IMG/VR virus record: IMGVR_UViG_3300033984_000473 | Span: 124,001-188,000 of that record | Reading direction: 5' to 3' (one strand) | Length of the DNA: 64,000 bases | Part shown: piece by piece, positions 17,901-41,999 of the stretch | Layout of the letters: every line of letters begins with the position of its first letter | How positions within the stretch are numbered: position 1 is the first letter of the stretch | Made by a program: the position numbers and the translations under genes | The notes under the pieces: model-generated | What the model was told of the DNA's origin: nothing | The model's input: only the letters and a program-made list of their open reading frames with translations | Database searches by the model: none

Positions 17901-18671
17901 TTACAATTTAGGTATAAGATTTATTAAAAAATCTCTATCACTAGTGAATATAGGTGTTTCTAAGGCTACCCAGTTACGTCTAACAGCAGCTGCTTCACCA
18001 CTATAGTCAATATCTGCTACTCTTTTGATAACTACCCCACGTTTATACTTGGTTTTATAGTCATTCCAATTGATACCCTTCTCATTAAACAACATTTCCT
18101 GTTTATCACTACCAGATTTACCCTCTAATAGTTTGTGTGAAAAGTTAGCAGATGCGGCCATACTAATACTATTTCTAGTACAGTCTTGCTGTCTGAATAT
18201 CATAGCGTTAACCATTTCATCAACCGTAGGTACTTGGAATACACGAGCATCAAAGAAAGCTAATTTGTTTAAGCTTTCAGCTAACCCTTCCATACCTTGC
18301 ATCGTTGACCTTAGATGCCTTAACTGGTTGAACTTAGCAGTTGCCAAAGAGGCAGCAATACTTGTCATCTTTTGTACGCTGTAATCAAACCACGCACTAG
18401 TTTCAAGTGTGTCATAATCGCACAACACCACGCTGATTTCGTCAGATTGTGTGTAAGCAAACTTTGCACCTTGAATGTTCTCACATAAGAAGATTGCGGT
18501 TGCATCCATGTCATCGCTAAACCCATCATCGAATGGTTTGTTTAAGTTTTTAGTGAATTTAGAAAATCCTTTACCATCAAGTCTAATGATTGTAATTGTT
18601 CTTCTATTCAAAAAAGTTTTGGTTCTGTTTTCGTAGAATTCTTTCATTCTATCACCTAAAGATAAAGTCAT
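17901..18671 (-). CDS. tRNA(His) guanylyltransferase Thg1-like protein
   Basis: RLDGKGFSKFT, YTQSDEIS, FDAR, RQQDCTRNSI. Confidence 0.92.
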   Translation of the reverse strand: MTLSLGDRMKEFYENRTKTFLNRRTITIIRLDGKGFSKFTKNLNKPFDDGFSDDMDATAIFLCENIQGAKFAYTQSDEISVVLCDYDTLETSAWFDYSVQKMTSIAASLATAKFNQLRHLRSTMQGMEGLAESLNKLAFFDARVFQVPTVDEMVNAMIFRQQDCTRNSISMAASANFSHKLLEGKSGSDKQEMLFNEKGINWNDYKTKYKRGVVIKRVADIDYSGEAAAVRRNWVALETPIFTSDRDFLINLIPKL

Positions 18672-19296: not shown

Positions 19297-19481
19297 GAGT
19301 CATAATCGGTTATATCCTTTTCAATTCCATAGTCTTCAAATCTTACCTTTACGTTAAGACCGATACCAGTATAAGAAATTAGATAAGAAACCTTACCAAG
19401 CTTTCCATGTAAAAAATTTACACTTTCTTCTAGCTTTGCAAGTGTTTCCACTTCTTTTTCGTTTAAGTTAAAGTCAGCCAT
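19290..19481 (-). CDS. hypothetical protein
   Basis: short ORF ending DITDYDSW. Confidence 0.6.
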   Translation of the reverse strand: MADFNLNEKEVETLAKLEESVNFLHGKLGKVSYLISYTGIGLNVKVRFEDYGIEKDITDYDSW

Positions 19482-20473
19482 TAAAATCTTTCTTTTTTAA
19501 GCCCTTCGTAGCTTGTTTTACTATTGATTGCACTAACAGCTAAACCGATTTGTTTTGCCATGCTAATAACATTTAGTTTATCATTACCAAAGATACCATT
19601 GTAATCTGTTGGTTTTCTTAATGAATCACTAATAACCAATTCAGTTAGTACTGAATTTTCAATACGAGCCAAAGCTGGTCCAGAACAGATACCATGACTG
19701 ATGATTGCTCTTACACTCTTGGCACCAGCTTCCATAATAACTTCAGCGGCTTTGCAAAGTGTTCCAGCAGTATCAACCATATCATCTAAGATGATTACGT
19801 TCTTACCACTAACATCACCAATGATAACCATATCATCAATAACGTTGGCTTGTTTACGAGTTTTATCCAACATAACATAATTGATTGAAATGTCATGGTA
19901 GTTAGCCAATTGGTCTTTCATACGTTTAACACGTTTACCAGAACCAGCATCTGGGCCACACAAGATTGTATCTTCATCATATATCGAAGCGATGTACGAA
20001 TCAAAAACATTTTTACCTTCTAAGTGTGTAACTGGGATATTGAAAAACCCTTGAATTTGGTCAGCATGTAAATCAAATGTGATAACACCTGTTGCTCCAC
20101 GATGCTCAATCATTTCAACCATAACCTTGGCACCGATAGGTCCACGTGATTGGTCTTTCTTGTCTTGACGAGCGTATGGGAAGTAAGGTAAGATTGGAAT
20201 AATCTCTCTAGCGGCTGCACGTTTGGCGGCATCTATCGCTAGATTTAACTTTATGATTTCATCTGAATTATTAGGGCTAGACAAGATATAAACTCGCTTG
20301 CCTCTAATTGATGATTCAAAATCCACACATAACTCACCATCAGAAAATTTCTGACTGTTGATTATGTCTAGCTTTACTTTCTCTTTTATCTTTGAATTGT
20401 TATTGATAAAATCAATAACACTATTGGCTAAATCTTCTCTACCATCTAACGCCACTAATACTGAATCATTCAT
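19481..20473 (-). CDS. prs: ribose-phosphate pyrophosphokinase (PRPP synthetase family)
   Basis: FSDGE, PYFPYARQDK, DLHADQIQGFF, PDAG, DDMVDTAGT; start set at MNDSV downstream of the promoter box. Confidence 0.92.
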   Translation of the reverse strand: MNDSVLVALDGREDLANSVIDFINNNSKIKEKVKLDIINSQKFSDGELCVDFESSIRGKRVYILSSPNNSDEIIKLNLAIDAAKRAAAREIIPILPYFPYARQDKKDQSRGPIGAKVMVEMIEHRGATGVITFDLHADQIQGFFNIPVTHLEGKNVFDSYIASIYDEDTILCGPDAGSGKRVKRMKDQLANYHDISINYVMLDKTRKQANVIDDMVIIGDVSGKNVIILDDMVDTAGTLCKAAEVIMEAGAKSVRAIISHGICSGPALARIENSVLTELVISDSLRKPTDYNGIFGNDKLNVISMAKQIGLAVSAINSKTSYEGLKKERF

Positions 20474-20528
20474 AGTTATATATTTTTTAACAAAGGTACA
20501 TAAAAATTTTTGAATAAACAAATGTTTA

Positions 20529-20702
20529 TTATTCTTTATTACTTTTTCTATTAAATAAATAAATAACACCAGCAATCAAAGATGCCGTTGCCAAGTATTT
20601 CAATACACTAACGAATAAAAATATTCCAAAGAAAATACCTTGTAAGACGAACAATACTAGTAATACTGCTATAAAAATTCCGATTAATTTTACTGTTTTC
20701 AT
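20529..20702 (-). CDS. small membrane protein
   Basis: two hydrophobic segments. Confidence 0.6.
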   Translation of the reverse strand: MKTVKLIGIFIAVLLVLFVLQGIFFGIFLFVSVLKYLATASLIAGVIYLFNRKSNKE

Positions 20703-20706
20703 AATT

Positions 20707-21069
20707 TTATTTTGTTTTTTTCCATTCTCTATCATGGAATTTTGTTTTATAAGTACCTAATTCAAAACTTCCACGATACAATATTATATCCAAAGCCATT
20801 GGCAATTCCAAGTATAATTTATCCCATTCAGCTTTTTGTTCATCCGAATACTCTGGCATTTCTTCGGTGTTAAAAGGGTCGAAACCTTCTGGAACACCAT
20901 TAAGAATAAGGTCAATCGCCTCATATATGTTATTCTCACCAAATGGTGGAATATTTTCCACACCATCATGACCGACAGCAACAATTTGGTTTTCGGTGTT
21001 TAGCGACCAACGTAAATGCTTGATTAGTTTTACGTGTTCTTCTTTTATTTCTAATTTTAATATACTCAT
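20707..21069 (-). CDS. hypothetical protein
   Basis: ORF in operon. Confidence 0.7.
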   Translation of the reverse strand: MSILKLEIKEEHVKLIKHLRWSLNTENQIVAVGHDGVENIPPFGENNIYEAIDLILNGVPEGFDPFNTEEMPEYSDEQKAEWDKLYLELPMALDIILYRGSFELGTYKTKFHDREWKKTK

Positions 21070-21347
21070 TACTCTATGATATTTTTTCTTTCGAAATTAA
21101 TAATATCACCTAACTTAAATTTGTTGATTGAATCTGTAAATCTAAATGATAAGTTACTACCATCTCTACTTGAAAAGTAATTACCGTCAATTACTTCGAC
21201 AGTATAGATTGACATTTGAGGTAGACTATCATCACCTTGCATTCCAGTGATAACAAATCGTGTTGGAGAATCAACATAATCATTATTTTGAGTTTTATTA
21301 CATGATATAAACAAACCTAAAATTAGTATTGCTATTATTTTTTTCAT
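21069..21347 (-). CDS. lipoprotein
   Basis: MKK-hydrophobic-FISC lipobox. Confidence 0.7.
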   Translation of the reverse strand: MKKIIAILILGLFISCNKTQNNDYVDSPTRFVITGMQGDDSLPQMSIYTVEVIDGNYFSSRDGSNLSFRFTDSINKFKLGDIINFERKNIIE

Positions 21348-21700
21348 TATTTTTTTACTTTAACAGAGTCAAGCAATTGCTGAACTCTTTTGTTATCTTT
21401 TTTCGCTTTAGCAAATTCTTTTGCCGCTCTTTCGTCAATAACTTCACAAATCGCTATTGCTCTTAGATTTACATAGTGCTTACCTTGATATTCACTTCCT
21501 TTCACTACAAACGCAACTGTAACAACTTCGTTTACCATAAAGGTATCCAAGGCATCTACATTGTCGTTAATGAAATCTAATTTTAATTTTTCTGGGTAAG
21601 CTTCATCAGTTTCAATGATAAATTCTATTTTTTTAAATTTATCACCAAATGTTTGTACTTCACCAATGTGTCTAATTGTTCCTTCTACAAAATAATGCAT
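21347..21700 (-). CDS. DUF3127 family OB-fold (ssDNA-binding-like) protein
   Basis: G.I..IGE.QTFG..FKK.EFIIET.E.YP, V.F...G.EY.GK.Y. Confidence 0.75.
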   Translation of the reverse strand: MHYFVEGTIRHIGEVQTFGDKFKKIEFIIETDEAYPEKLKLDFINDNVDALDTFMVNEVVTVAFVVKGSEYQGKHYVNLRAIAICEVIDERAAKEFAKAKKDNKRVQQLLDSVKVKK

Positions 21701-21701
21701 C

Positions 21702-22454
21702 TTATTTGTCGTTTTTATCGTCTCCGATTGCATGCGTTAATAATCTATTTACTACTTCTGTTACACCTTCAACTGCTGATTTCTTTACGTACTCAACCTT
21801 AAGCCCATAATTATCTAAATAATGCATCGGCTCTGGGTCGATGTAAATTATTTGACAATCGGTTCTCACATTTTGTAACATATCCAAAGTATAACCAATT
21901 TGTAAGCTTGTACCAATTATTAATAATATATTGGCATTACGAACTGCTTGATATGCTCTGTCAACATGTTTTGGATATTCACCAAACCATACAATATCTG
22001 GTCTAAGTTGTGAATCAAATTTATCATCTTTATCACCAATGTTGATGTCGTTGTATCCTATGTCTATTGATTCGCAAACATCAGAAAAAGGACCTCGACT
22101 ACCACCATAACAACCTTTGGCTTTGGTTAATTCACCATGCAAGTGTAATATATTGGTTGAGCCACCTCTTTCATGTAAATCATCAACGTTTTGAGTTGTG
22201 ATAGTTACATCATATTCTTCTTCCAAGGAAGCCAACGCTGTGTGAGCAGCATTCGGGTGAACATCTGGTAATTGTCGTCTTCTCTCGTTGTAGAAGTCCA
22301 ATACCATAGCTCTATCTTTTTTCCAACCTTCGATAGTTGCTACGTCCTCAACCTTATGGTTATTCCATAGGCCATCTTTGACATCTCTAAAGGTGAGGAT
22401 TCCAGATTCTTTGCTGATACCAGCACCACTAAAAATTACAATTTTCTTTTTCAT
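21702..22454 (-). CDS. cobB: Sir2/CobB family NAD-dependent deacylase
   Basis: GAGISKESGI.TFR, TQNVDDLHERGG, HLHG, RPDIVWFGE, GTSL. Confidence 0.92.
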   Translation of the reverse strand: MKKKIVIFSGAGISKESGILTFRDVKDGLWNNHKVEDVATIEGWKKDRAMVLDFYNERRRQLPDVHPNAAHTALASLEEEYDVTITTQNVDDLHERGGSTNILHLHGELTKAKGCYGGSRGPFSDVCESIDIGYNDINIGDKDDKFDSQLRPDIVWFGEYPKHVDRAYQAVRNANILLIIGTSLQIGYTLDMLQNVRTDCQIIYIDPEPMHYLDNYGLKVEYVKKSAVEGVTEVVNRLLTHAIGDDKNDK

Positions 22455-22753
22455 TATCTATTGTTTAATGTTCTTAAACCAGCAAAAAAGATTTTGATAC
22501 CCTTGATTATAATACCTAACCCACCAACATAACCGAAGTTATACCAGAAACCGTTATTGTTTATAGCGTAGATAGCAATGTTATCTGAGAAAAGACTACA
22601 AATGAATGCTGGGAACATAATCATACCATGCCAAACTCCACCCCAAAATCCATAAACTTCTTGATTTGGGTCAAGGAATTGTATATGTGCAACATCGGCA
22701 CATCCAGTTAATAACAACAGCACAAATGCTGCTAAGAATATTTTTGTTTTCAT
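22454..22753 (-). CDS. membrane lipoprotein
   Basis: LLTGC lipobox; GFW.G.WHG, NNG.WYNFG. Confidence 0.7.
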   Translation of the reverse strand: MKTKIFLAAFVLLLLTGCADVAHIQFLDPNQEVYGFWGGVWHGMIMFPAFICSLFSDNIAIYAINNNGFWYNFGYVGGLGIIIKGIKIFFAGLRTLNNR

Positions 22754-22959
22754 ATTTTTTTGTTTTTTATTATATCAAATGTTAAGTTATTATGTATCTT
22801 GATTTGGTCTGACCTATAATGTTTAATATCGCCACCGTCACATAAAACAATGCACCATATATCATTTTCAAATGTTCCACCATTTGTAACATAAATAGCA
22901 TAACCTTCTTTATCTTCTTCAACAATCACAGGTATTGGAGTTTTAAATTCTAACATCAT
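22750..22959 (-). CDS. hypothetical protein
   Basis: ORF in operon. Confidence 0.65.
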   Translation of the reverse strand: MMLEFKTPIPVIVEEDKEGYAIYVTNGGTFENDIWCIVLCDGGDIKHYRSDQIKIHNNLTFDIIKNKKI

Positions 22960-23318
22960 AGTGAATCTTTTATTTTTTTCAAACGAGCTTCAACCCGTCT
23001 GTTTACTTCTTCTTCAATAACTCTACTAGTACTTAAAGAAACAATCTTTTCCGTGATACCGTTGATTTTATCATCAACATGTCTAATCATGCTACTTTCA
23101 ATTTGTTTTAGTCTGAAGTTAACCCTTTCAGTCAACGCTGATTTTGTTTCTTTTGTTATACCTTCTGCGAAGAAATCTAATTCATCGTTTAGATACTTGG
23201 TTAATATCTCTTTGACTTCACTATTAGATAATAAAACTGTTTCATCTGAAGTAGTTTTAATCTTCATGTTATCAAATTTATTTGAGTTGTACGTTAATAA
23301 ATCACTAATCCTTGCCAT
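22956..23318 (-). CDS. hypothetical protein
   Basis: ORF in operon. Confidence 0.65.
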   Translation of the reverse strand: MARISDLLTYNSNKFDNMKIKTTSDETVLLSNSEVKEILTKYLNDELDFFAEGITKETKSALTERVNFRLKQIESSMIRHVDDKINGITEKIVSLSTSRVIEEEVNRRVEARLKKIKDSL

Positions 23319-23748
23319 TATAGTTAGCAGTTAATAAATTTAAAACCAAACCCCAATCATTCTCTGGGTCAAATCCAGCTTTGTCCTCAAACAAAACGTT
23401 CATGTAAGGTTTTTTATCATAACATCCATATCCGTTGGTTTGTGTCGGAACCTCTGGGTTCTCATTCACATACTTGAAATGAATATCATTCTTTTTGAAT
23501 AATTCCAAATACTCATCAACCTCGTTAGGGTGTGAACACGTATAAAGGAACATTACAATATCTGGTCGTTTGCTGATAAATTGTAACGTTTCTATAGCCA
23601 AAGGATAAAATTCATCGGGTGTACTACCAACAGTGTAATTAGGTTTAAGAATTGTACCATGAATATCAAAGGCCCAAAATGTTCGGTCCCAGTTTCTAGT
23701 AATTTTGTACTCGAAGTGATTCGTTAGAATCGATTTAGTTATACTCAT
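23305..23748 (-). CDS. HAD-like protein
   Basis: AFDIHGT, YTCS, NENPE, FEDKAGF. Confidence 0.7.
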   Translation of the reverse strand: MSITKSILTNHFEYKITRNWDRTFWAFDIHGTILKPNYTVGSTPDEFYPLAIETLQFISKRPDIVMFLYTCSHPNEVDEYLELFKKNDIHFKYVNENPEVPTQTNGYGCYDKKPYMNVLFEDKAGFDPENDWGLVLNLLTANYNGKD

Positions 23749-23750
23749 AG

Positions 23751-23930
23751 TTATGTTTCAAAAATGTTTCTAAAATCTAAAATGTTCATTGAGAAATATG
23801 TGTCTTCTACTTTGAAGAACACAGCACTTCCAATATATGTTAGGTTAGTTGGTTGCCATTCTTTGACTACGTTGAGTGGGAACGTTTGTTCACCTTCGTT
23901 GGCAACGCCTACTTTAACAAGGTCATTCAT
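23751..23930 (-). CDS. hypothetical protein (59 aa, not in ORF track)
   Basis: MNDLVKVGVANEGEQTF...FRNIFET; directly downstream of the promoter box at ~23960. Confidence 0.6.
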   Translation of the reverse strand: MNDLVKVGVANEGEQTFPLNVVKEWQPTNLTYIGSAVFFKVEDTYFSMNILDFRNIFET

Positions 23931-24019
23931 TAATGCTAAATTTAAAAATTGTTATTTAACAAAGGTACTAATACTTTTGTTAAAAAGCAAGAGAAACCTA
24001 AAAATTATAGTAAACTGTA

Positions 24020-24469
24020 TTACGGTACATAGTTTACAATCGTAACATACTCACCACGAAGTTCTTCGTCAATGATTGCTTCAATTGTAGCCCAATCACC
24101 ACCAGCTAACCCAGCACCAATCTTTGGTAAACCAAATGTTTTACCAGAAAATTTAGCTTTCATCAACTTCAACGCAGAACGCAAAGCATCATAGTCTAAA
24201 TCCATCTGACCACTTCGTCTTCCAGTATAGTCATATTGACCATACAAGTTAACAACTATTGGTTTTGTAGCTTCACTATATGAAATAGTACCTAGCTTGT
24301 TAATATCCCCTTGAACTGTCTTGCAGTCAGCAGCGTAAGCATCTGGGAATTTATGTTTGATTTGCGGGGCAATACCAGCACCCATAGTGTTGAAACAATT
24401 ACAACAGTGCCCAATTACTTCGTAGTTTTCGGCATCCTTAACAAGGTCACCATCGATATATCTAATCAT
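24020..24469 (-). CDS. macro domain ADP-ribose-processing protein
   Basis: GDL, HCCNCF.TMGAGIA, NLYGQ, PKIGAGLAGGDW. Confidence 0.9.
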   Translation of the reverse strand: MIRYIDGDLVKDAENYEVIGHCCNCFNTMGAGIAPQIKHKFPDAYAADCKTVQGDINKLGTISYSEATKPIVVNLYGQYDYTGRRSGQMDLDYDALRSALKLMKAKFSGKTFGLPKIGAGLAGGDWATIEAIIDEELRGEYVTIVNYVP

Positions 24470-24983
24470 TTTGTTTAAATTTTTTGTTTGCCATTTCAAT
24501 ACTAGCAGCGATTGTGTCAACTAAAGTATTATAAATGATTGGGTTATATAATTCGTTTTCTTTGGCAACAGCTTCCCACATGATGTCTAAATAACCCATA
24601 CGATAAGCATCGTCTGGTCTACCATAAATCATTTTTTGTGGTTCTCTACCTTGCCAGTAACCAAACTCCATATTGGTTGTTAGAGCAATAAGTTCTCTAG
24701 TTCTTGGTATCCAAAATAAGACACAATCAGCTTTTTTAAGACCATTATATTCCCACATAGGAATCCAAGCCTTGTCTTTATCTGATTCAGTCTTAGAAGT
24801 AAATTCTGGGATGATTAAATCACCTTCAAATCCTTGACGTTTAAATTCTTCAATAGCCTCAAAACGCCATGATGTTAAATGAGGTTGATTTCCTCTTACA
24901 GTTGGTCCAGCTAAGAAAACTGAAGGTCTGTTTATCGACCTTACAGTATCTTCTGATTCTTCATATCTATGTACTTGTACCAT
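24462..24983 (-). CDS. nucleoside 2-deoxyribosyltransferase-like protein
   Basis: VFLAGPT, SWR, WE, FWIPR, TTNMEFG. Confidence 0.8.
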   Translation of the reverse strand: MVQVHRYEESEDTVRSINRPSVFLAGPTVRGNQPHLTSWRFEAIEEFKRQGFEGDLIIPEFTSKTESDKDKAWIPMWEYNGLKKADCVLFWIPRTRELIALTTNMEFGYWQGREPQKMIYGRPDDAYRMGYLDIMWEAVAKENELYNPIIYNTLVDTIAASIEMANKKFKQND

Positions 24984-25480
24984 TATGAATTTTTGTTAAA
25001 TGTTTCTCTTACTCGCATAATGGCTTCACCTAACCAGTTTTTGCCTTGCCATTTGCTTTTGTCTTCGATGTTTCTGTGGTCAACACCCATTCCAATACCC
25101 CAAATCTTGTCGTATGGACTAGCCTCAACAATTTCTTTGTCATCAGTTTTCATTAACTCAACCTTTAGACTAGGATTTTGTGTGAATTTAGCCAAGTTAC
25201 CTTGATAAACAAATTCTCTACACACTTCATTCCATCTGTCTGTGTTAAAGTTTTTAACTGTACGACCCAAAGATTTTTGGTCAACTGGTCTAGAGGCAGC
25301 CATGATAGCATCGTGACTCTCTTGGTCGTTGAATGTCAATGCTTTCATCGCCATCATGTATTGCTCACAGCAATTATATTCGATTCCAGCAATGCTGAAT
25401 TTAGACGAATACCACTGACTGTAGATTCCATTCCAAAAGAATACGAATTCATCAGTTGTTTTTTCGTTTGTATTTTTCAT
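24983..25480 (-). CDS. NADAR (YbiA-like) family protein
   Basis: SQWY, EQYMMA.KA..F.D, KFTQN, EASPYD.IWGIG, G.NWLG. Confidence 0.92.
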   Translation of the reverse strand: MKNTNEKTTDEFVFFWNGIYSQWYSSKFSIAGIEYNCCEQYMMAMKALTFNDQESHDAIMAASRPVDQKSLGRTVKNFNTDRWNEVCREFVYQGNLAKFTQNPSLKVELMKTDDKEIVEASPYDKIWGIGMGVDHRNIEDKSKWQGKNWLGEAIMRVRETFNKNS

Positions 25481-25481
25481 T

Positions 25482-25871
25482 TTAAATAGTTTTTTTAGTC
25501 GTGCTTCTATGAAATTCAATCAATTCCACACTTTTTATTTCTAACCCTTTGGTATATGTGAAAGTTTCAAGTCTTTCTTTTATCATATCCAAGTGTTCCT
25601 GTGTTGGTTCTTCATCAAAGAAAATCACAACACCTTTATTGGTACCACCATCTATATCGTTACCCAACGCTACTGGTCTATACGTACCATTATCATCAGC
25701 TTCATTTCCGATAACATCATCGAAAAATTCTGCAACAGTTTCATCGATTAATTCGTCACCAACTTCACAATCACCAACGTGACCAGTTAGGTGTGCACAC
25801 ATTTCTCTTTCAAAGTTTCCAGCGTACTGATTAGTTTCAATCAATACAGCAAATTTAGCTCTCATTCCCAT
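25482..25871 (-). CDS. hypothetical protein
   Basis: YAGNFEREMCA..TG motif; ORF in operon. Confidence 0.7.
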   Translation of the reverse strand: MGMRAKFAVLIETNQYAGNFEREMCAHLTGHVGDCEVGDELIDETVAEFFDDVIGNEADDNGTYRPVALGNDIDGGTNKGVVIFFDEEPTQEHLDMIKERLETFTYTKGLEIKSVELIEFHRSTTKKTI

Positions 25872-26476
25872 TATTCTAAGTTTTTAAGTGCGTTAGCTTT
25901 ATGGTTTGCACTAATTTTGTCATACAAACCAGATACAAGACTATAAGTGTATTCAAATAATCTTCGGAATGGGTTATTTAACAACGTACCCAACAATGAT
26001 AAAGGCCAGTATGAAATCCAAGCTACAATCGAAGCTTTATTATCCAATCCTTTCGGCATGATTTTATTTGCGATATCTGATGTAGTTTTAACATCACTAC
26101 TATAAACACTAATACCAACAAGTCTTAATTTTTCACACAAATTAACGATATAGTTTGGTGCTTTTAATTCATCAACTTTATTAGCCACAGTTTTAAATTT
26201 TCGATATACTGATTTTACAAACTCATTCCATTTTAAGAATGACCATATAACCCCACATATCAAATACCCTACGATAAATAAAACGGTTACGAGTATGTTG
26301 GCGGTCATAAAGGTCCATGCAATACCACCGTAGTTCCAAATTAATAATGCGATAGCTAAACTAAAAGCTGTTGTCGCAGTTCCTTCTGATTGTAATTCTA
26401 GTGATATAATAATCACCAACGCTGCGATAATACTAAACCATAGTATGAATGTCGCACTTGCTAATAATGTTAACAT
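25871..26476 (-). CDS. membrane protein
   Basis: three N-terminal TM segments; WISYWP. Confidence 0.7.
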   Translation of the reverse strand: MLTLLASATFILWFSIIAALVIIISLELQSEGTATTAFSLAIALLIWNYGGIAWTFMTANILVTVLFIVGYLICGVIWSFLKWNEFVKSVYRKFKTVANKVDELKAPNYIVNLCEKLRLVGISVYSSDVKTTSDIANKIMPKGLDNKASIVAWISYWPLSLLGTLLNNPFRRLFEYTYSLVSGLYDKISANHKANALKNLE

Positions 26477-26488
26477 GTTTTTCTTTTT

Positions 26489-28054
26489 TTAAATTGTTAT
26501 TTTTGCTCTTTCTCTAATTTCTTCGAATGTGTAATCAACAAGGATTTCACCATTTCTAAATACTTCAACCAATTCATCTGTTACTGAATCAAAGTCAGCA
26601 TCCATTGATGTAACGGTTCTGTATGTACCATCATCATTCTTAACTAATTTAAGCTTTCCTTGCTTAGATTTTTTGAATGATTTTGTAATGTTACCATCAG
26701 CATCCATTTCAGTTGGTGACTTAACAATATTTCTTTCTTCACCATTAACAATTGCATAACATGCTTTGGTTGCGAAGTTTTGCGTATCTCTGTTGATATC
26801 TGCTTGTAGCAATTTACCACCCATACCCAACGCTAAGTTCTCTGGAGAGATTTTCAATTCATCTAACATTGCGTAGATTTCTCTGATTGAATCCAAATTT
26901 ACACCATCACCTTGAATAACACGTACTTGTGGTGGCAATACCTTGTAACCTTTTTCATTGGTTGTGTAACCAAATTTATCGAATAAGATGTTGAAGATTT
27001 CTTTTAAAGTCATCAATACATCACCAGAATCTGGGCGTATAACCAATTGATTCCCTGGAGTTGCTGGTCTTGATAAAACCAATTCTTTCAACTCAGTTCC
27101 CCAATACTCAGAACATGCTCTGAAAATGTTAAATGAATCTGATACACACGCAACCAATCCAGTAGGATAAGTTTTCAATACACGCATCATAAGTGCTAAC
27201 TCACCTTCTTCACCGTTTAGGGTCATGATTGAGTGCTCTGTTGCTGGGATTGATAAACCATACACAGTTTCTGTGTTATAAAGGTCACGGATTAATTTTG
27301 ATGCTACTACGGTGTCTGAACCTCTAAAGTTCACCAAGTGAGCAGAACCACCAATCTTAGCTGATTGTACACTTGATACACCACGGAAACCGAAGTCATT
27401 CAATACGAAATCAACAAGGAAGTCGATAAGGCCAGCATCATACGCTGTTCCTTTTACGAATGCGGCAGTAACGATTTTTCTTACTTCTCTAGAAAGTGAA
27501 GCAACGGTAATCGGATACCAAACTTGAAGCAATATTGACTCTAAGAAGTTGGTCAACCATGCACATTCTGGGTCAAGACTTTCAATTACGAATAACACAT
27601 TTTTAGTGTTAACGATAGTTCCTTCTGGAACCGCCTTGATGCTGATAGGTAATTTCCCATCATATTTGTCAACGATGTAATCAAACTTGCTTCTATCGAA
27701 TACACCATCACGACCAAAGATACCTAATTCATTACCTAACATATCGTTAGCTTCATCAACTTCTTCTTTTGTAATAGCAATACCCTCTAAGTATTGTTTA
27801 AGTACAATCTGTAAACCATAGAATACGGTTTCTGAAAATTTACCACCTCTTGATTCCATGTATGAAACCATCTTGGTCATTTCAGAACCATAGAATTTGT
27901 GGTGTGAATATTTGTAACCATCGGAACATAAGACCAAGTTATCTGGCTTAGTGATGATTTTAGTAAGGTATTTTTGCATACCTTCAATACTAGACCAGTC
28001 TTTATTTTGAATGGCTGTCGCTAAATTCGTAGCTAATTGTGTTTGTAAACTCAT
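26489..28054 (-). CDS. nadV: nicotinamide phosphoribosyltransferase
   Basis: SDGYK.SH, DFGFRG, PATEHS, VSDS, IRPDSG, IQGDG, GMGG.LLQ, KSKQG. Confidence 0.93.
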   Translation of the reverse strand: MSLQTQLATNLATAIQNKDWSSIEGMQKYLTKIITKPDNLVLCSDGYKYSHHKFYGSEMTKMVSYMESRGGKFSETVFYGLQIVLKQYLEGIAITKEEVDEANDMLGNELGIFGRDGVFDRSKFDYIVDKYDGKLPISIKAVPEGTIVNTKNVLFVIESLDPECAWLTNFLESILLQVWYPITVASLSREVRKIVTAAFVKGTAYDAGLIDFLVDFVLNDFGFRGVSSVQSAKIGGSAHLVNFRGSDTVVASKLIRDLYNTETVYGLSIPATEHSIMTLNGEEGELALMMRVLKTYPTGLVACVSDSFNIFRACSEYWGTELKELVLSRPATPGNQLVIRPDSGDVLMTLKEIFNILFDKFGYTTNEKGYKVLPPQVRVIQGDGVNLDSIREIYAMLDELKISPENLALGMGGKLLQADINRDTQNFATKACYAIVNGEERNIVKSPTEMDADGNITKSFKKSKQGKLKLVKNDDGTYRTVTSMDADFDSVTDELVEVFRNGEILVDYTFEEIRERAKITI

Positions 28055-28130
28055 ATTGTTAAATTTTTTGTTCTTATTTGATACAAAGGTACTAAAAGTT
28101 TTTTGGATAACCAAATATTATATCGATTAT

Positions 28131-28472
28131 TTATTCATTCGTATTCACGATTAAAACTTTTTTACCTAATTTGTTTGCTTTATTGATACTATCTTTAGTA
28201 CCCTTAGATTCCATATCCCAAAAAGCTACTACTAATTCAGAAGCTTCCACTATCTGGGTATTCCTTAAAAAACCAGCAATTTTGCCATAGGCTTTCCAAT
28301 CTGGTTTAAATATAAGAGTTTCAATACCATTTTCTTTGGCATAATCCTCACCCAACGTATCAGCACCAGCGGCACCACCACTTATTATCAATGTTATACC
28401 TAATGGTTGTAGTGTTTTCTTTACTAATTCATAATCAGTAAAGCCTCGACTACCTATAATAGCTACTTTCAT
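28131..28472 (-). CDS. SLOG superfamily (DUF2493/YspA-like) protein
   Basis: IIGSR.F, ISGGA.GAD, AG..RN, AFWD..SKGT. Confidence 0.85.
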   Translation of the reverse strand: MKVAIIGSRGFTDYELVKKTLQPLGITLIISGGAAGADTLGEDYAKENGIETLIFKPDWKAYGKIAGFLRNTQIVEASELVVAFWDMESKGTKDSINKANKLGKKVLIVNTNE

Positions 28473-29968
28473 TAGTAATTACTTAATGTACCCTTGTTAT
28501 TTCTAACAATAACACTAGTAGGTTTTAATTCTTTTGGGCTAGTTAACCCCATAGCACCCAAAACTTCACGAATTTCATGAATTACAGCTGTATGATAGTT
28601 AAAAACACGTACTTTTTTCTCTTCTGGGTTCAACGCACTGATTAAATGCTTGTTTTGAGTAGCAATTCCTACTGGACATGTGTTCATATTACACTCTCTA
28701 GCTTGAATACATCCTAAACTAAGCATAAATGCACGTGCTGCGTTAACAATATCAGCACCCAACGCCAATAATTTGATAATATCGAATGAGTTGCTAGCTT
28801 TTCCAGATGCAATAAGAGTAATTTTGTCTCTCAAGTCGTATTGTTTAAGTGTTTTATTAACAAAAATCAACGCATCTACTAGTGGCATACCAACATTATT
28901 GGTAAAAACTATCGGTGCAGCACCTGTTCCACCCTCTCCACCATCAATTGTGATGAAATCTGGGTATATTTTTAGTTCTTTCATAGTATACACCAACGAT
29001 ATGAACTCACTTTCATCACCTAGACATAGTTTTATACCTATAGGTAACCCATCAGATAGGTCTCTAAGCTCACTTATGAACTCTAATAACTCTTTATGGT
29101 TAGTAAATGCACTATGGTATGGGGGACTCATTACATCTACATGTGGTTCTACCCCACGTATGTCAGCAATTTCTTGAGTATTCTTAGATGCTGGGAGAAT
29201 ACCACCATGACCAGGCTTGGCCCCTTGTGATAATTTTATCTCTACCATCTTGATACTCTTATTATTTAATATAGTATCAAAAAATCTAGGTGTTGAAAAT
29301 ACACGTCTACCATCAACTGTTCTGCCAGCACCAAAGTAACCAGTTCCAATTTGGAAACATAAATCCCCACCATTCTCTACATGATAAGGACTAACACCAC
29401 CTTCACCTGTATTGTGATAGAAGTTACCTAGCTTGGCACCACCATTCAATGCTCGAACAGCAGCATCTGACAAAGCTCCGTAACTCATTGCACTAATGTT
29501 AAAGATACTAGCCGAATAAGGATGGCGACAGTTTTCACCACCAATCGTTACACGAGGCTCAGCAATCAATGAAATGTCTTTAGGGAACATAGAATGACCT
29601 AAGAACTCGTAACCTTCCTTATACACGTCTAATTGCGTTCCGAAGGGTGTTGTGTTGATTTCACCTTTGGCTTTTTGATAGACATCAGAACGTTTCTCAC
29701 GATTGTATGGTGTTCCGTTGGTATCGTGCTCAATAAAGTATTGTTGTATCTTTGAACGTTCCGACTCAAAAACCCATCTAAGTCTTGCAACTAATGGGTA
29801 GTTTTTAAGTAGAGCATGTTTTGTTTGGAATATGTCGTGAATCACAACAATTAACGCAACTAAAAACAAGGTTGCTAATATCCATAAACCTAAGCTTTGA
29901 ACTATGTAAGAAATTACACCCAAGGCTATTGTCCAATAAACAAAAAAGATTACGATTTTATCTCTCAT
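28472..29968 (-). CDS. FMN-binding glutamate synthase family protein
   Basis: SAMSYGALS, NTGEGG, EIKLSQGAKPGHGG, DGGEGGTGAAP, CIQA..C....CP.G. Confidence 0.9.
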   Translation of the reverse strand: MRDKIVIFFVYWTIALGVISYIVQSLGLWILATLFLVALIVVIHDIFQTKHALLKNYPLVARLRWVFESERSKIQQYFIEHDTNGTPYNREKRSDVYQKAKGEINTTPFGTQLDVYKEGYEFLGHSMFPKDISLIAEPRVTIGGENCRHPYSASIFNISAMSYGALSDAAVRALNGGAKLGNFYHNTGEGGVSPYHVENGGDLCFQIGTGYFGAGRTVDGRRVFSTPRFFDTILNNKSIKMVEIKLSQGAKPGHGGILPASKNTQEIADIRGVEPHVDVMSPPYHSAFTNHKELLEFISELRDLSDGLPIGIKLCLGDESEFISLVYTMKELKIYPDFITIDGGEGGTGAAPIVFTNNVGMPLVDALIFVNKTLKQYDLRDKITLIASGKASNSFDIIKLLALGADIVNAARAFMLSLGCIQARECNMNTCPVGIATQNKHLISALNPEEKKVRVFNYHTAVIHEIREVLGAMGLTSPKELKPTSVIVRNNKGTLSNY

Positions 29969-30951
29969 TAGTATTTGATTAATTTATCAGTCACCACTTT
30001 TTTCAAGAATGTTTTCATCAACTCAACGTGTTCTGGAACAATCTTATCTTCAACCTTAAAGCCATAGTCAACCTTTGGAATGTGCCCATCACCTTGACTT
30101 GGTTCTGTTATTACATTTAAGAAATCTTTTAAGTCGAACCAACGAACTTCAGCGATATCGTCAGAAGCTTCTGGACGACCCATTTGGTCCCATTCGTATG
30201 TCATAAACAATGTTGTCATGATACCAGATTCCTCTTTGGCGTATCTCCAATCTTCAACAGCTTGACTGCAAATATAAGTCATACCCAATGCTGATAACTT
30301 GGTTTCTTCCATCAACTCTCTACGAGCAGCCATTTCCCAGTTTACATCGTCACGGTCAACAAAACCACCAACAAATCTAAAAAGAGTTTCTGCTGGTTTT
30401 CTAGCCAAAAGGATTTGTCCTTCTCTAGCTACAACAACATCAACGGTTGCATAGGTTACTGGTCTTTGTTTTGAGATACCATAGATTATACCAGCTCTAA
30501 AATCTTCACTTTCTTCAACAGTTTGTGCTGCTAAACCTCTGATTTCAGTAGCGTTGTGAGATTCGATTGGTGTAAATTCTTCTACATGGTGTCTACCATG
30601 ATAGTGAGGGATAAAAGAATCACGACTACCGTAAATGATAGCTTGTTTCTCTGGAAATATAGTTCTGATAGTGTTATCAAGGTTTGTTGACCATTTTTCG
30701 TCACTTCTATTATCTTCTAAAGGTAGAACTATAACATTAGGATACGTATTTTGTATCATTTTCTTTCTGGTAGGAAAATCCAAAGGATTTCTTTTTGTAT
30801 TCTGGATTCTAGCGATACCTAGAAATACAATAACATTTGAGTGTTTGTTGGTTACATGGTTAAGTAACCCTTTATGACCATCATGTAGATAAGGCGTTTC
30901 AAATCTACCAATAATAATCCCAATTGCTTCCGCTTCGTTTAATTTTTTCAT
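29968..30951 (-). CDS. bifunctional NMN adenylyltransferase / ADP-ribose Nudix hydrolase (NadM-Nudix)
   Basis: GRF...LHDGH, NPL, ATEIR; Nudix box GGFVD......AARREL.EET; SDD. Confidence 0.9.
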   Translation of the reverse strand: MKKLNEAEAIGIIIGRFETPYLHDGHKGLLNHVTNKHSNVIVFLGIARIQNTKRNPLDFPTRKKMIQNTYPNVIVLPLEDNRSDEKWSTNLDNTIRTIFPEKQAIIYGSRDSFIPHYHGRHHVEEFTPIESHNATEIRGLAAQTVEESEDFRAGIIYGISKQRPVTYATVDVVVAREGQILLARKPAETLFRFVGGFVDRDDVNWEMAARRELMEETKLSALGMTYICSQAVEDWRYAKEESGIMTTLFMTYEWDQMGRPEASDDIAEVRWFDLKDFLNVITEPSQGDGHIPKVDYGFKVEDKIVPEHVELMKTFLKKVVTDKLIKY

Positions 30952-30978
30952 GTTTCTAATTTTATAATACAAAGGTAC

Positions 30979-31010
30979 AAAAAAAATCCCGATAAAACAA
31001 ATTATCGGGA
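30979..31010 (-). terminator. intrinsic terminator
   Basis: TCCCGATAA/TTATCGGGA stem plus T-run. Confidence 0.7.
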
Positions 31011-40240: not shown

Positions 40241-40294
40241 AATTTTATTTTTTCTACAAATATACGAATTAATTCGACTGATTGCAAGTTTTTG

Positions 40295-40389
40295 AGCAGA
40301 AAAGAGGAATCGAACCTCTGAATCTTCACGTAGTCATACGATTTTTTCTCCCTTGGAATTGGGTGTTTTACCAACTAAACTATTTCTGC
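40295..40389 (-). ncRNA. atypical tRNA-Gly(TCC)-like RNA with imperfect anticodon stem and ~25-nt extra arm
   Basis: acceptor GCAGAAA/TTTCTGC, D-loop AGTTGGTA, T-arm AGAGG-TTCGATT-CCTCT; insert contains a CGTA..TACG hairpin. Confidence 0.6.
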
Positions 40390-40392
40390 ATG

Positions 40393-41307
40393 TAACAAAG
40401 TGAGCGTAGCCACGTTCCTGTTTTATTTCATCATTTATCTTTTATAGAGTATTTTTGTTTTTGTTTTTAATAATATTGGTTCTAATTGCTGCTTCTCTCA
40501 TTTTTTCTCTAGCTTCTTCAGATAATACTCTTTTACCACCAACTAGTTTGCTTTTAACTAAATTTGATAGTTTAATTTTTTGTTCTTTACCATCTTCAGA
40601 ATCCCAATAATTTGTGATTTGTTTAGACATAAATTCTTTATATTCATCACCTCTTTCGAATAAACCACCATTAGGTATAAATCGACCATCTGAAATTGCT
40701 TTTTTTATCGAAGAACTTAAATTTTGCTTGTGTTCTTCAGTCCACAAATAATTAATAACACCTTCACCACCATCAGTTAAATTTAATAATGGTCCAGTTT
40801 TAATATCACGTCTTCCAATTTTCTTAATCATCAGTTTTTCAAATTCTAACGCTTCTAATTCATTTTCAGTTGTTAATATTTTTTCATAAAATATTTCAGA
40901 ATCTTTATTAATCATCTGTCTAATTTTAGATAAAACTGGTGATTTTAATTTGGTTCTTTTAGCTCGTCTGTAATGTTCATACATTCGTAATTTAGAACCC
41001 TTTCCAACATAAAATGGTGTTTCACCATCTTTTAAAACATAAACATAATACTCCATAATTTTCTACTTTATCTTAACTTATACCCGTTAGATATAAATAT
41101 CTTGATATTTTGAAAAAGCCACTACCCGTCTATCATCGCAATCCAAGTTCCCTTGCTAAGACTGTATGTGTTGCACCCCGTGTTGCGGTAGTAATAACGA
41201 TACTTCGTTGACAGTCCCACTTTTAGGCCTTCGTAGGTATCTCCTACCTCTTGGAGAGATGTCGTGAACTTCCTCTGTTGCCAGCGATGAATCCTCTTTC
41301 TTTGTTA
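40393..41307 (-). ncRNA. rnpB: RNase P RNA (divergent), interrupted by a GIY-YIG ORF; segments 41119-41307 and 40393-40441
   Basis: P1 TAACAAAG/CTTTGTTA, P2 TTCATCG/TGATGAA, P3 CTG-GCAA-CAG, P4 GAGGAAGTTCACG / ACAGGAACGTGGCT with bulged U, AGCAAG, GGGTAG and AGATAAATG conserved elements. Confidence 0.8.
40442..41056 (-). mobile_element. GIY-YIG homing endonuclease inside the RNase P RNA gene
   Basis: YYVY...FYVGKG...R, E..A..FE, GPLLNLTDGGEG, NUMOD-like tail; own ATATTTAT promoter. Confidence 0.85.
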
Positions 41308-41676
41308 TTCTATTTCTATTTTTTTAATCATTTCAAATGGTAAAAAACCATCCAACCTTGTTTCAGCTACATCAGCAAAATATGGCAAGTCTTCCAAATA
41401 GAACTCACCCATTGTAAAGTTGATACATAGGAACTTCCCTTTGGTAGCATCCCATTTAGCCACATGACCAGCTCTCCATCTATGACCGTTGTAATAAGCA
41501 CCATCAATAAGGTTTTCTTTAGGTATCATAACAGCAACCATTCTAATCAAACGATTAGCTTCCTTGATATCTTCATCTTTTCTTCTTAATTCAGCTTCAA
41601 TCATAGCATCGTTAATCTTATCAGCTTTTTCTTTACCGACAACTTCTACCAACTTATTATAATGTTCTGTTTTCAT
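41305..41676 (-). CDS. hypothetical protein
   Basis: IPK..L..GAYY.G..R...VA.W motif; own promoter box. Confidence 0.7.
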   Translation of the reverse strand: MKTEHYNKLVEVVGKEKADKINDAMIEAELRRKDEDIKEANRLIRMVAVMIPKENLIDGAYYNGHRWRAGHVAKWDATKGKFLCINFTMGEFYLEDLPYFADVAETRLDGFLPFEMIKKIEIE

Positions 41677-41721
41677 AATACAAAGGTATTAAATTAATTT
41701 GATATAAACAACTAATATCGT

Positions 41722-41780
41722 AATAAAGCTAAAAAATGTATAATAAACCAATAAGCTTTATTATACATTTTTTACTTTAT
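41722..41780. repeat. long AT-rich inverted repeat (hairpin) at the end of tRNA operon 1
   Basis: taaaaaatgtataataaa ... tttattatacatttttta arms flanked by ataaag/ctttat. Confidence 0.6.
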
Positions 41781-41802
41781 CGTTCTAGTAATCAAGTACT
41801 TG

Positions 41803-41877: not shown

Positions 41878-41890
41878 TTTGTTAATCTAG

Positions 41891-41962: not shown

Positions 41963-41999
41963 ATAGTTGTAACTATCCCTTCAACGCATTGAAAGGCAG

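What the first reader, a model, noticed from the sequence alone, without database searches (positions are those of the whole stretch)
19481..30951. Closed-loop NAD+ reconstitution set: Prs, NAMPT and NMNAT-Nudix
Established: phages counter NAD-depleting defences (Thoeris, DSR, SIR2/TIR effectors) with NARP1 (Prs-like Adps plus NAMPT-like Namat) or NARP2 (Nampt plus Nmnat). This window has all three enzyme types, plus a Nudix domain fused to NMNAT. Both NADase products could then be recycled: ADPR to R5P to PRPP, then with nicotinamide to NMN and NAD+. Whether the Prs/NAMPT pair uses ADPR directly cannot be told by eye.
Basis: partly seen in the sequence, partly recalled or inferred. Interest (0 to 1): 0.6.

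Follow-up and report, generated by a model that had tools for sequence, protein, structure and literature searches.

The report
Jumbo-phage NAD+ salvage island with Prs
A freshwater jumbo phage carries the known two-enzyme NAD+ salvage pair (Nampt plus NMNAT-Nudix) together with an ordinary PRPP synthetase and several ADP-ribose-processing genes, so on paper it could rebuild NAD+ from both breakdown products without draining the host's PRPP; none of this has been shown at the bench.

Summary
On the minus strand of 19,481-30,951 lie a PRPP synthetase (Prs, 19481-20473), a nicotinamide phosphoribosyltransferase (Nampt, 26489-28054) and an NMNAT-Nudix fusion (29968-30951).

The Prs is a canonical class I enzyme. 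It nests among Bacteroidota Prs, keeps the C-terminal module that Adps lack, and is split from four Adps with 100/100 support. The Nampt has the Nampt-type motif, not the Namat adenine clamp, and groups with KVP40 NadV.

So this is NARP2 plus a phage-borne PRPP supply. It sits in a larger NAD+/ADP-ribose island (SIR2, Macro, NADAR, deoxyribosyltransferase-like, SLOG) that is syntenic in 362-376 kb relatives. Each of the three genes follows its own copy of one Bacteroidetes-type promoter.

The loop ADPR to R5P to PRPP to NMN to NAD+ is chemically plausible and was already drawn for bacteria in 2008. It is inferred here, not shown. Prs may instead simply feed nucleotide synthesis. I rate this a new variant of a known kind, of moderate interest.

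The parts
19481..20473 (-). Canonical class I ribose-phosphate pyrophosphokinase (Prs, 330 aa)
   Evidence: Pfam PF13793, PF00156 and PF14572. NF002320 300.8 bits against cut-off 297, where Adps score 75-101. About 210 bits to human and B. subtilis PRPS. The tree places it inside Bacteroidota Prs and apart from Adps at 100/100. Motifs FSDGE, YARQDKK, DLHADQIQGFF, DKTRK and DDMVDTAGT, and the C-terminal module, are present.
20491..20499 (-). Promoter-like box GTACCTTTG (Bacteroidetes -7 type TAnnTTTG), 17 nt before the Prs ATG, with a TTTG about 20 nt further upstream
   Evidence: 15 copies in the window against 0.5 expected; 14 are on the coding strand. TAnnTTTG variants precede Prs in relatives L016 and L112.
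21702..22454 (-). Sirtuin-type SIR2 (CobB-like NAD+-dependent deacylase homologue)
   Evidence: PF02146 at 2.7e-40. 153 bits to E. coli CobB structures. Conserved at this place in L016, L112 and L113.
23960..23968 (-). Promoter-like box GTACCTTTG inside the island, heading the unit that runs towards SIR2
24020..24469 (-). Macro-domain protein of the phage 'Poa1p-like phosphatase' family
   Evidence: PF01661. PHROG 335 'phosphatase' at 1.8e-52. PDB relatives are BT1257, OARD1/TARG1 and Poa1p. 3017 phage records hold a relative. Start taken at ATG 24469.
24462..24983 (-). Nucleoside 2-deoxyribosyltransferase-like protein
   Evidence: PF15891 at 5e-9. Fused to NADAR in relative L016.
24983..25480 (-). 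NADAR-domain protein
   Evidence: PF08719 at 3.3e-51. PDB 8bau NADAR at 2e-14.
25871..26476 (-). Conserved 201-aa protein with four hydrophobic helices, function unknown, always just downstream of Nampt
   Evidence: 113 relatives, all from this phage clade, with no Pfam family. AlphaFold2 pLDDT 80, all-helical. No PDB fold match.
26489..28054 (-). Nicotinamide phosphoribosyltransferase (Nampt/NadV type, 521 aa)
   Evidence: PF18127 and PF04095. 390-404 bits to human NAMPT and 330 to Xanthomonas Nampt, against 194-216 to the Namat structures. Has the motif GMGGKLLQADINRDT and lacks the Namat insertion. Splits from Namat at 100/100.
28084..28092 (-). Promoter-like box GTACCTTTG, 29 nt before the Nampt ATG at 28054
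28131..28472 (-). YspA-type SLOG-domain protein (variable: absent in some relatives)
   Evidence: PF10686 at 1.2e-14. Absent in L016 and skipped in a relative's contig (joint 28118->28472).
28472..29968 (-). Glutamate-synthase FMN-domain family protein with a hydrophobic N-terminus; role in the island unknown
   Evidence: PF01645 at 1e-88. Also next to Nampt in L016. TAATG stop/start overlaps on both sides.
29968..30951 (-). NadM-type NMN adenylyltransferase fused to a Nudix hydrolase (327 aa)
   Evidence: Weak collinear hits to NadM-Nudix equivalogs and to PDB 2QJO/2QJT. Best fold matches are 2QJT, 2R5W and 2QJO over 324-337 columns. H23-x-G25-H26, T135/R138 and R211-E212-x2-E215-E216 are invariant or nearly so in 31 relatives.
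30970..30978 (-). Promoter-like box GTACCTTTG, 18 nt before the NMNAT-Nudix ATG
30987..31010 (-). Terminator-like hairpin plus T-run that closes the upstream AAA-ATPase unit
   Evidence: 9-bp stem, 4 GC pairs, tail TTTTTTTT

Best explanation
The region is the core of a conserved NAD+/ADP-ribose island in a jumbo phage. The record is 233 kb and estimated 64% complete, so the genome is roughly 360 kb. The phage comes from lake water and most likely infects Bacteroidota.

The island encodes a NARP2-type salvage pair: a Nampt that makes NMN from nicotinamide and PRPP, and a NadM-type NMNAT that adenylates NMN to NAD+. It adds a canonical PRPP synthetase of bacterial (Bacteroidota-like) descent, so the phage brings its own supply of the costly substrate PRPP.

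The Nudix domain fused to NMNAT is inferred to cleave free ADP-ribose to AMP and ribose-5-phosphate. Prs can turn that ribose-5-phosphate into PRPP, which closes the loop. The Macro, NADAR and SIR2 genes in the island are enzymes that release or produce ADP-ribose species and could feed it.

Shown here:
- gene identities, the types of the enzymes and their catalytic motifs
- the shared promoter type
- synteny in relatives

Inferred:
- all enzyme activities
- the substrate of the Nudix domain
- the flow of ribose-5-phosphate from ADPR into PRPP
- a counter-defence role
For: Prs is canonical:
- It sits in a phage clade (99/98) inside a Bacteroidota Prs clade (100/97), and four Adps lie across a 100/100 branch.
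- All catalytic and regulatory motifs and the C-terminal module are present.
- It scores about 210 bits to solved PRPS, against about 49 for an Adps control.
- It passes NF002320, which Adps fail.

Nampt is of the Nampt type:
- The SCH-equivalent GMGGKLLQADINRDT resembles KVP40 GMGGGLLQQLDRDT.
- Namats carry G[VI]GS[YF]T.QY.T[RC]D and a 50-70 residue insertion, both absent here.
- The split from Namat has 100/100 support, and PDB scores agree.

NMNAT-Nudix: the fold and both motif sets are present.

Linkage:
- GTACCTTTG promoter boxes lie directly upstream of each of the three genes. There are 15 in the window against 0.5 expected.
- TAATG stop/start overlaps occur within units.
- The same gene order is found in 362-, 368- and 376-kb relatives.
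- The only type-I phosphoribosyltransferase domain in the 233 kb held is Prs itself. Nampt is therefore the only recognisable PRPP user, and there is no PnuC.

Literature:
- The KVP40 pair cancels Thoeris and DSR2, but uses PRPP and is costly (10.1101/2024.02.11.579819).
- KVP40 itself has no Prs.
- The bacterial loop via Nudix and Prs is drawn in PMC2330246.

Near-identical Nampt and GltS-like pieces occur in three freshwater RNA libraries.
Against: - No activity was measured.
- The Nudix domain is only about 21% identical to characterised ADPR pyrophosphatases. Its family has also been proposed to trim NAD+ itself (PMC9503650).
- Prs and Nampt are 6 kb and about 17 genes apart, in separate transcription units.
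- The promoter is a general class of this phage (34 + 6 copies in 233 kb). Sharing it shows no more than the same timing class.
- Related phages are syntenic throughout, so conserved order is weak evidence of a functional link.
- In three huge phages Prs lies 50-450 kb from the salvage pair.
- MaAM05 has Prs without any salvage gene.
- Two relatives with the pair lack Prs (LR756500, Tunturi_5).
- The genome is incomplete, so other PRPP users may exist in the missing third.
- RNA-library contigs do not prove transcription.
Confidence: 0.55

Rival explanations
1. Prs is a general precursor-supply gene of a very large phage. It boosts PRPP for purine, pyrimidine and other nucleotide synthesis during replication, and lies among NAD+ genes only because this part of the genome collects metabolic genes. 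The salvage pair then works as plain NARP2 on whatever PRPP the cell has.
For: - Canonical Prs occurs in Microcystis phage MaAM05 without a Nampt or NadM-Nudix.
- In huge phages it lies far from the pair.
- Prs here has its own promoter and is followed by unrelated genes (PhyH, Thg1).
- The pair works without a phage Prs in KVP40 (10.1101/2024.02.11.579819).
Against: - No other type-I phosphoribosyltransferase is found in the 233 kb held.
- Prs keeps its place within about 6-10 kb of Nampt in all three long relatives examined.
- Five of six huge phages with a canonical Prs also carry a NAPRTase-family enzyme.
Confidence: 0.3
2. The Prs-like and NAMPT-like proteins act as in NARP1: the first pyrophosphorylates ADP-ribose to ADPR-PP and the second joins it to nicotinamide, giving NAD+ directly.
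For: - Both Pfam family pairs are the same as in NARP1.
- NCBIfam NF006629 and TIGR01251 do not separate the two kinds.
- KVP40 Nampt shows a minor side activity on ADPR-PP (10.1101/2024.02.11.579819).
Against: - The Prs is outside the Adps clade (100/100).
- It keeps the C-terminal alpha11-alpha12 module, whose loss is called the family signature of Adps (PMC13586617).
- It keeps DLHAxQIQGFF and DTAGT where Adps have DPHS and DGGRT.
- The Nampt lacks the Namat clamp motif GSX.X.X.TRD (PMC12774641).
- The two genes are not adjacent, whereas 97% of adps genes have namat next to them (10.1101/2024.02.11.579819).
Confidence: 0.04
3. The island is housekeeping for the phage's own NAD+ economy rather than counter-defence. 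It keeps NAD+ up for phage NAD+-consuming enzymes (the sirtuin here, ligases and ADP-ribosyl enzymes elsewhere) and clears their ADP-ribose by-products. This can hold together with the best explanation.
For: - A sirtuin, a Macro domain of the O-acetyl-ADPR deacetylase/phosphatase kind and a NADAR lie between Prs and Nampt.
- 'NAD-jumbo phages' with many NAD+ consumers have been described (PMC11662467).
- NARP2 raises NAD+ even without any defence system (10.1101/2024.02.11.579819).
Against: - The KVP40 pair is shown to cancel Thoeris, DSR2 and aRES (10.1101/2024.02.11.579819; 10.64898/2026.01.28.702374).
- Macro and NADAR are also known tools against host ADP-ribosylation.
- Nothing here separates the two roles.
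Confidence: 0.3

Closest known systems
NARP2 of Vibrio phage KVP40 (NadV Nampt + NatV NMNAT-Nudix)
   Same: - The same two enzyme types are present.
- The Nampt is 38% identical to KVP40 NadV, has the same Nampt-type motif and falls on the same side of the Nampt/Namat split.
- The NMNAT is fused to a Nudix domain, as in the solved NadM-Nudix proteins.
   Different: - KVP40 has no Prs; here a canonical Prs travels with the pair.
- The NMNAT-Nudix is too divergent to find KVP40 NatV by tblastn at 1e-5.
- The two genes are separated by a GltS-like and a SLOG gene and have separate promoters. In the huge phage LR756504 they are adjacent.
NARP1 (Adps + Namat) and NARP1-AP (with the Macro phosphatase Adpp)
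   Same: - The Pfam families are the same (Prs-like, NAMPT-like).
- A Poa1p-like Macro gene lies in the Nampt transcription unit, recalling Adpp.
   Different: - The Prs is not an Adps and the Nampt is not a Namat.
- The genes are not adjacent.
- The route from ADPR would run through hydrolysis to ribose-5-phosphate, costing one more ATP, instead of through ADPR-PP.
Bacterial NAD+ recycling sub-network under NrtR (nadM-nadV and prs-nadV operons; Nudix ADPR pyrophosphatase)
   Same: The same four reactions, ADPR -> Rib-P -> PRPP -> NMN -> NAD+, were laid out for bacteria, including a second prs copy dedicated to nadV (PMC2330246).
   Different: - Here the set is carried by a virus.
- No NrtR-type regulator was seen.
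- It comes together with Macro, NADAR, SLOG and SIR2 genes.
Phage NadV/NadM neighbourhoods with NADAR, and 'NAD-jumbo phages'
   Same: - NADAR next to NadM and NadV in phages, and NadM always accompanied by NadV, are described in PMC9503650.
- Jumbo phages with complete salvage routes and many NAD+ consumers are described in PMC11662467.
   Different: Neither paper mentions PRPP or Prs: the search terms occur 0 times in both. The Prs component and its canonical nature are what this window adds.

Membership tests
NARP2 (Nampt + Nmnat) | Nampt of the PRPP-using kind, in the clade of KVP40 NadV rather than Namat | tested here: met
   Split from four Namats at 100/100. Nampt-type motif present, Namat insertion absent. 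PDB scores favour Nampt.
NARP2 (Nampt + Nmnat) | An Nmnat encoded in the same phage genome | tested here: met
   NadM-type NMNAT-Nudix at 29968-30951.
NARP2 (Nampt + Nmnat) | NAD+ made from PRPP, nicotinamide and ATP; rescue from NAD+-depleting defence | not testable with these tools
   Needs enzyme assays and infection assays.
NARP1 (Adps + Namat) | Prs-like protein belongs to the Adps clade | tested here: not met
   It lies inside cellular Prs, across a 100/100 branch from Adps of Bas63, ICP1, Izhevsk and Mydo.
NARP1 (Adps + Namat) | Loss of the C-terminal alpha11-alpha12 module and a remodelled donor site (PMC13586617) | tested here: not met
   The module is present and aligns with E. coli Prs. 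FSDGE, DLHAxQIQGFF and DTAGT are retained.
NARP1 (Adps + Namat) | Namat selectivity-clamp motif GSX.X.X.TRD with aromatic X (PMC12774641) | tested here: not met
   The window has GMGGKLLQADINRDT, with no aromatic residues.
NARP1 (Adps + Namat) | adps and namat adjacent in one operon | tested here: not met
   They are 6 kb and about 17 genes apart, in separate promoter units.
Class I ribose-phosphate pyrophosphokinase | Family model above its curated cut-off, with catalytic and regulatory motifs | tested here: met
   NF002320 scores 300.8 against 297, only just above; E. coli scores 532.6 and Adps 75-101. Motifs are present.
Class I ribose-phosphate pyrophosphokinase | PRPP formed from ribose-5-phosphate and ATP | not testable with these tools
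   Needs an enzyme assay.
NadM-Nudix bifunctional NMNAT/ADPR pyrophosphatase | Two-domain architecture: N-terminal nucleotidyltransferase, C-terminal Nudix | tested here: met
   The six best PDB fold matches are 2QJT, 2R5W and 2QJO over the full length, at E 2e-16 to 2e-15. The next best matches are Nudix-only, at 2e-8.
NadM-Nudix bifunctional NMNAT/ADPR pyrophosphatase | HxGH and SxTxxR nucleotidyltransferase motifs; Nudix box REx2EE | tested here: met
   H23, G25, H26, R138, R211, E212, E215 and E216 are invariant, and A134 and T135 nearly invariant, in 31 relatives. The first motif carries one extra residue compared with 2QJO.
NadM-Nudix bifunctional NMNAT/ADPR pyrophosphatase | Score above the NCBIfam equivalog cut-offs | tested here: not met
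   The best score is 60.7 bits, against cut-offs of 354-449. It is a divergent branch, so the substrate range is not assured.
Adpp (ADPR-1''-phosphate phosphatase of NARP1-AP) | Poa1p-like Macro domain associated with the reconstitution genes | tested here: inconclusive
   PHROG 335 'phosphatase' at 1.8e-52, with a weak, partial hit to Poa1p structures. The family is widespread in phages. No direct comparison with the Vibrio phage Gary protein was possible.

The most novel reading that the evidence does not exclude
A virus carries a self-contained NAD+ cycle.
- Its own or host enzymes split NAD+: sirtuin, NADase defences, ADP-ribosyl transferases.
- Macro and NADAR free the ADP-ribose.
- The Nudix domain cuts it to ribose-5-phosphate.
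- A captured bacterial Prs turns that into PRPP.
- Nampt and NMNAT rebuild NAD+.

This would be a third, hydrolytic way of recycling ADP-ribose, which could be called 'NARP2 with PRPP supply'. It would remove the PRPP cost and toxicity reported for plain NARP2, and it would work against defences that NARP1 cannot handle.
Probability: 0.3. Interest if true: 0.6.

Novelty: new variant of a known kind. Interest (0 to 1): 0.4.

Why it matters
NARP2 is reported to be effective against more kinds of NAD+ depletion than NARP1, but to be costly and even toxic because it consumes PRPP. A phage that brings its own PRPP synthetase, and can regain ribose-5-phosphate from ADP-ribose, would show how that cost is met in nature.

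This phage group is abundant in lakes and probably infects Bacteroidota, where defence and counter-defence are little studied.

There is also a practical point for annotation. A genome with a Prs-family gene and a NAMPT-family gene is not thereby NARP1. The C-terminal module of Prs and the clamp motif of Namat separate the two cases, whereas the NCBIfam models TIGR01251 and NF006629 do not.

Tried and rejected
- **Near-identical DNA search.** Megablast of the region against 50,697 phage records found nothing. Relatives were reached only through proteins.
- **NCBIfam as a discriminator.** TIGR01251 passes Bas63 Adps (138.5 against 113) and NF006629 passes both Namats tested (468 and 565 against 405). 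Neither model can be used to tell NARP1 from canonical enzymes. My first reading as decisive was dropped.
- **Adps structures.** They are not in the PDB copy, so there was no direct score against them.
- **Sigma-70 promoter scan.** It found no more sites than in shuffles (61 against 66). The real signal was the Bacteroidetes-type box, found by eye and then counted.
- **The 201-aa protein after Nampt.** There is no Pfam hit even at E 5, no useful PHROG, only unnamed viral clusters in the Atlas, and no PDB fold match. The idea that it is a PnuC-like importer has no support beyond its hydrophobic helices.
- **Other small ORFs of the island.** Nothing informative was found, apart from DUF3127 and a weak PHROG hit 'phosphoheptose isomerase' for 23305-23748.
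- **KVP40 paper.** The paper of Lee et al. 2017 could not be read. What is said of it comes from papers that cite it.
- **Reads.** Only assembled contigs of RNA libraries were available. They show presence, not transcription, starts or levels.
- **Not used.** No complex prediction and no large profile search were run: family scans and word searches had settled the identities. No genetic code other than table 11 was used.

Full report
**Setting.** The window is bases 124,001-188,000 of a 232,931-bp linear viral record. The record is estimated to be 64% complete, which implies a genome of roughly 360 kb. G+C is 32-36% and almost all genes lie on the minus strand. The same DNA, or near relatives of it, is found in lake and freshwater metagenomes from at least nine studies.

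**Observation.** The three genes exist at the stated place.
- Prs is 19481-20473. It carries PF13793, PF00156 and PF14572.
- Nampt is 26489-28054. It carries PF18127 and PF04095.
- The fusion protein is 29968-30951. It has a Nudix domain and a weak cytidylyltransferase-like hit.

The longest ORFs of Prs and Nampt begin at upstream TTG codons. A promoter box lies inside each extension, so the ATGs at 20473 and 28054 are the likely starts.

The fusion protein is divergent. Its best score on the NadM-Nudix equivalogs is 60.7 bits against cut-offs above 350. Both halves nevertheless match the solved Synechocystis and Francisella enzymes in order. An AlphaFold2 model built on 31 relatives (pLDDT 84) finds those two enzymes as its six best full-length matches, at E about 1e-16. 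Single-domain Nudix proteins score only about 1e-8. The nucleotidyltransferase motifs and the REx2EE of the Nudix box are invariant in the family.

**More than three genes.** Between and around the three lie these genes:
- a CobB-like sirtuin
- a Macro protein of the common phage 'Poa1p-like phosphatase' family
- a nucleoside-deoxyribosyltransferase-like protein
- a NADAR protein
- a YspA-type SLOG protein
- a glutamate-synthase-FMN-domain protein
- a clade-restricted 201-aa protein with four hydrophobic helices

This kind of NAD+/ADP-ribose neighbourhood has already been described for phages, where NADAR lies beside NadM and NadV (PMC9503650). 'NAD-jumbo phages' have also been described (PMC11662467). 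Neither paper mentions PRPP or Prs.

**NARP1 or not.** Four bona fide NARP1 pairs served as controls: Bas63, ICP1, Izhevsk and Mydo.

For Prs:
- In a maximum-likelihood tree of 45 proteins, the window's Prs joins nine relatives from the same phage clade and three huge-phage Prs (99/98).
- That group sits inside a clade of Bacteroidota Prs (100/97).
- The four Adps sit across a long branch with 100/100 support.
- One caveat applies. The cellular rows were the 80 best matches to the query, so the Bacteroidota affinity rests on both the search and the tree.
- The alignment shows FSDGE, YARQDKK, DLHADQIQGFF, the PDAGSGKR loop, DKTRK, DDMVDTAGT and the C-terminal helices. Adps lack these helices, and PMC13586617 calls their loss the signature of that family.
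- Against solved structures the window's Prs scores about 210 bits and an Adps control about 49.

For Nampt:
- The published Namat clamp motif is GSX.X.X.TRD with aromatic X. It is present in all four controls and replaced here by GMGGKLLQADINRDT, close to KVP40's GMGGGLLQQLDRDT.
- The Namat insertion after RPDSGD is absent, and the first clamp loop is short.
- The Nampt/Namat split has 100/100 support.
- The window's protein scores 390-404 bits to human NAMPT but 194-216 to the entries 9w5w, 9w5x and 9ke8. A Namat control hits those entries at 525-709 bits.

NCBIfam models do not separate the two kinds. The pair is therefore canonical: NARP2 plus Prs, not NARP1.

**Linkage of the three.** The 9-mer GTACCTTTG fits the Bacteroidetes -7 element TAnnTTTG and has a TTTG or CTTG about 20 nt upstream. 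It occurs 15 times in the window against 0.5 expected, and 14 copies are on the coding strand. Copies lie 17, 29 and 18 nt before the ATGs of Prs, Nampt and NMNAT-Nudix. A fourth copy heads the unit that contains the sirtuin. A hairpin with a T-run closes the preceding unit just before the NMNAT-Nudix promoter. Within units, genes overlap by TAATG. Variants of the box precede Prs and the Nampt-slot gene in two relatives.

The gene order NMNAT-Nudix ... Nampt - 200-aa protein ... deoxyribosyltransferase-like - Macro ... SIR2 ... Prs ... Thg1 is kept in contigs of 362, 368 and 376 kb whose Prs is 71-79% identical. The GltS-like, SLOG and NADAR genes come and go. At least 15 contigs, matched by identical length, carry both Prs and NMNAT-Nudix relatives. 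In the 233 kb held, Prs is the only type-I phosphoribosyltransferase domain and there is no PnuC.

These facts fit a functional set, but they do not prove one:
- The promoter is a general class of this phage.
- Related phages are syntenic throughout.
- One third of the genome is missing.

**Wider distribution.**
- KVP40, the type NARP2 phage, has NadV and an NMNAT but no Prs.
- Among public phage records, full-length canonical Prs is essentially confined to huge and jumbo phages. The short unannotated Listeria, Enterococcus and Staphylococcus 'phage' contigs in that list may be host DNA.
- Three 635-642 kb phages have all three genes, with Prs 50-450 kb from the pair.
- Two further huge phages have Prs and a NAPRTase-family enzyme but no NadM-Nudix. 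Microcystis phage MaAM05 has Prs alone.
- Two phages with the pair lack Prs.

Prs is thus an optional companion of the pair, and it can also exist without it. This keeps the 'general PRPP supply' rival alive.

**Mechanism proposed.**
- Nicotinamide + PRPP -> NMN (Nampt).
- NMN + ATP -> NAD+ (NMNAT domain).
- ADPR -> AMP + ribose-5-phosphate (Nudix domain; inferred from the solved relatives' names and from PMC2330246).
- Ribose-5-phosphate + ATP -> PRPP (Prs).
- Net: ADPR + nicotinamide + 2 ATP -> NAD+ + 2 AMP + 2 PPi. That is one ATP more than NARP1.

The Macro protein may convert ADPR-1''-phosphate or O-acetyl-ADPR to ADPR, as shown for the Macro phosphatase Adpp of NARP1-AP (10.64898/2026.01.28.702374). 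NADAR may free ADPR from modified targets. Both suggestions are leads only. The authors of NARP2 stress its PRPP cost and toxicity, and a phage Prs is an obvious remedy.

**Expression.** Contigs from three freshwater RNA libraries match Nampt and the GltS-like gene with 0-2 differences over 150-280 nt. This shows presence in RNA libraries, not transcription.

**Verdict.** The NARP1-like reading is rejected at sequence level. I rate this a new variant of a known kind, with interest 0.4.

Noticed in passing
window 40294-43322, 54377-57888, 58809-60108 (minus strand): At least 26 tRNA genes lie in three clusters. Some are unusually long (51994-52110, 56401-56519; possible introns), and one is called with a four-base anticodon (56238-56311). 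A Thg1-like tRNA-His guanylyltransferase gene (17901-18671) lies two genes downstream of Prs.
   Followed up: partly
window 43575, 58127, 60310 (minus-strand promoter boxes): Three GTACCTTTG sites are followed by a conserved leader of about 40 nt (TATAACTTTTAAGAATAAGAGTATATTTATAAACAA) and stand just upstream of the tRNA clusters. It looks like a repeated tRNA-operon leader.
   Followed up: no
L016:14661-19634 (362-kb relative, JGI 3300042502): A close relative carries Cas3-HD helicase, Cas7fv-like and Cas6 genes a few genes downstream of Prs and Thg1. No such genes were seen at that place in the window.
   Followed up: no
L016:537-3069: In this relative the Nampt gene is in two pieces (NAMPT_N 145 aa, NAPRTase 368 aa) around a 219-aa ORF, and a LAGLIDADG ORF lies nearby. 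This suggests a mobile insertion or intron.
   Followed up: no
L112:1828-3471 and LR745206.1 (L015): In the 376-kb relative the Nampt slot holds a very divergent NAPRTase-family protein. It is 26% identical to the window's Nampt and groups with the odd enzyme of a 635-kb phage on a very long branch. Its substrate is unknown.
   Followed up: partly
window 28118-28472: The SLOG gene is an indel among relatives. A contig in one RNA library joins 28118 to 28472 with 14 other letters between, and relative L016 lacks the gene.
   Followed up: partly
window 25871-26476: A 201-aa protein with four hydrophobic helices always lies just after Nampt. Its 113 relatives all come from this phage clade, and it has no family or fold match.
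   Followed up: yes
window 28472-29968: A glutamate-synthase FMN-domain protein with a hydrophobic N-terminus sits between NMNAT-Nudix and Nampt, joined to its neighbours by TAATG overlaps. It is also next to Nampt in L016. Its link to NAD+ metabolism, if any, is unexplained.
   Followed up: no
window-wide; L019 (Cellvibrionaceae MAG contig): Both the promoter type (-33 TTTG, -7 TAnnTTTG) and the Prs phylogeny point to a Bacteroidota host. The nearest 'cellular' Prs (53% identity, in a Cellvibrionaceae MAG) branches with the phage clade and may be a mis-binned phage contig.
   Followed up: partly
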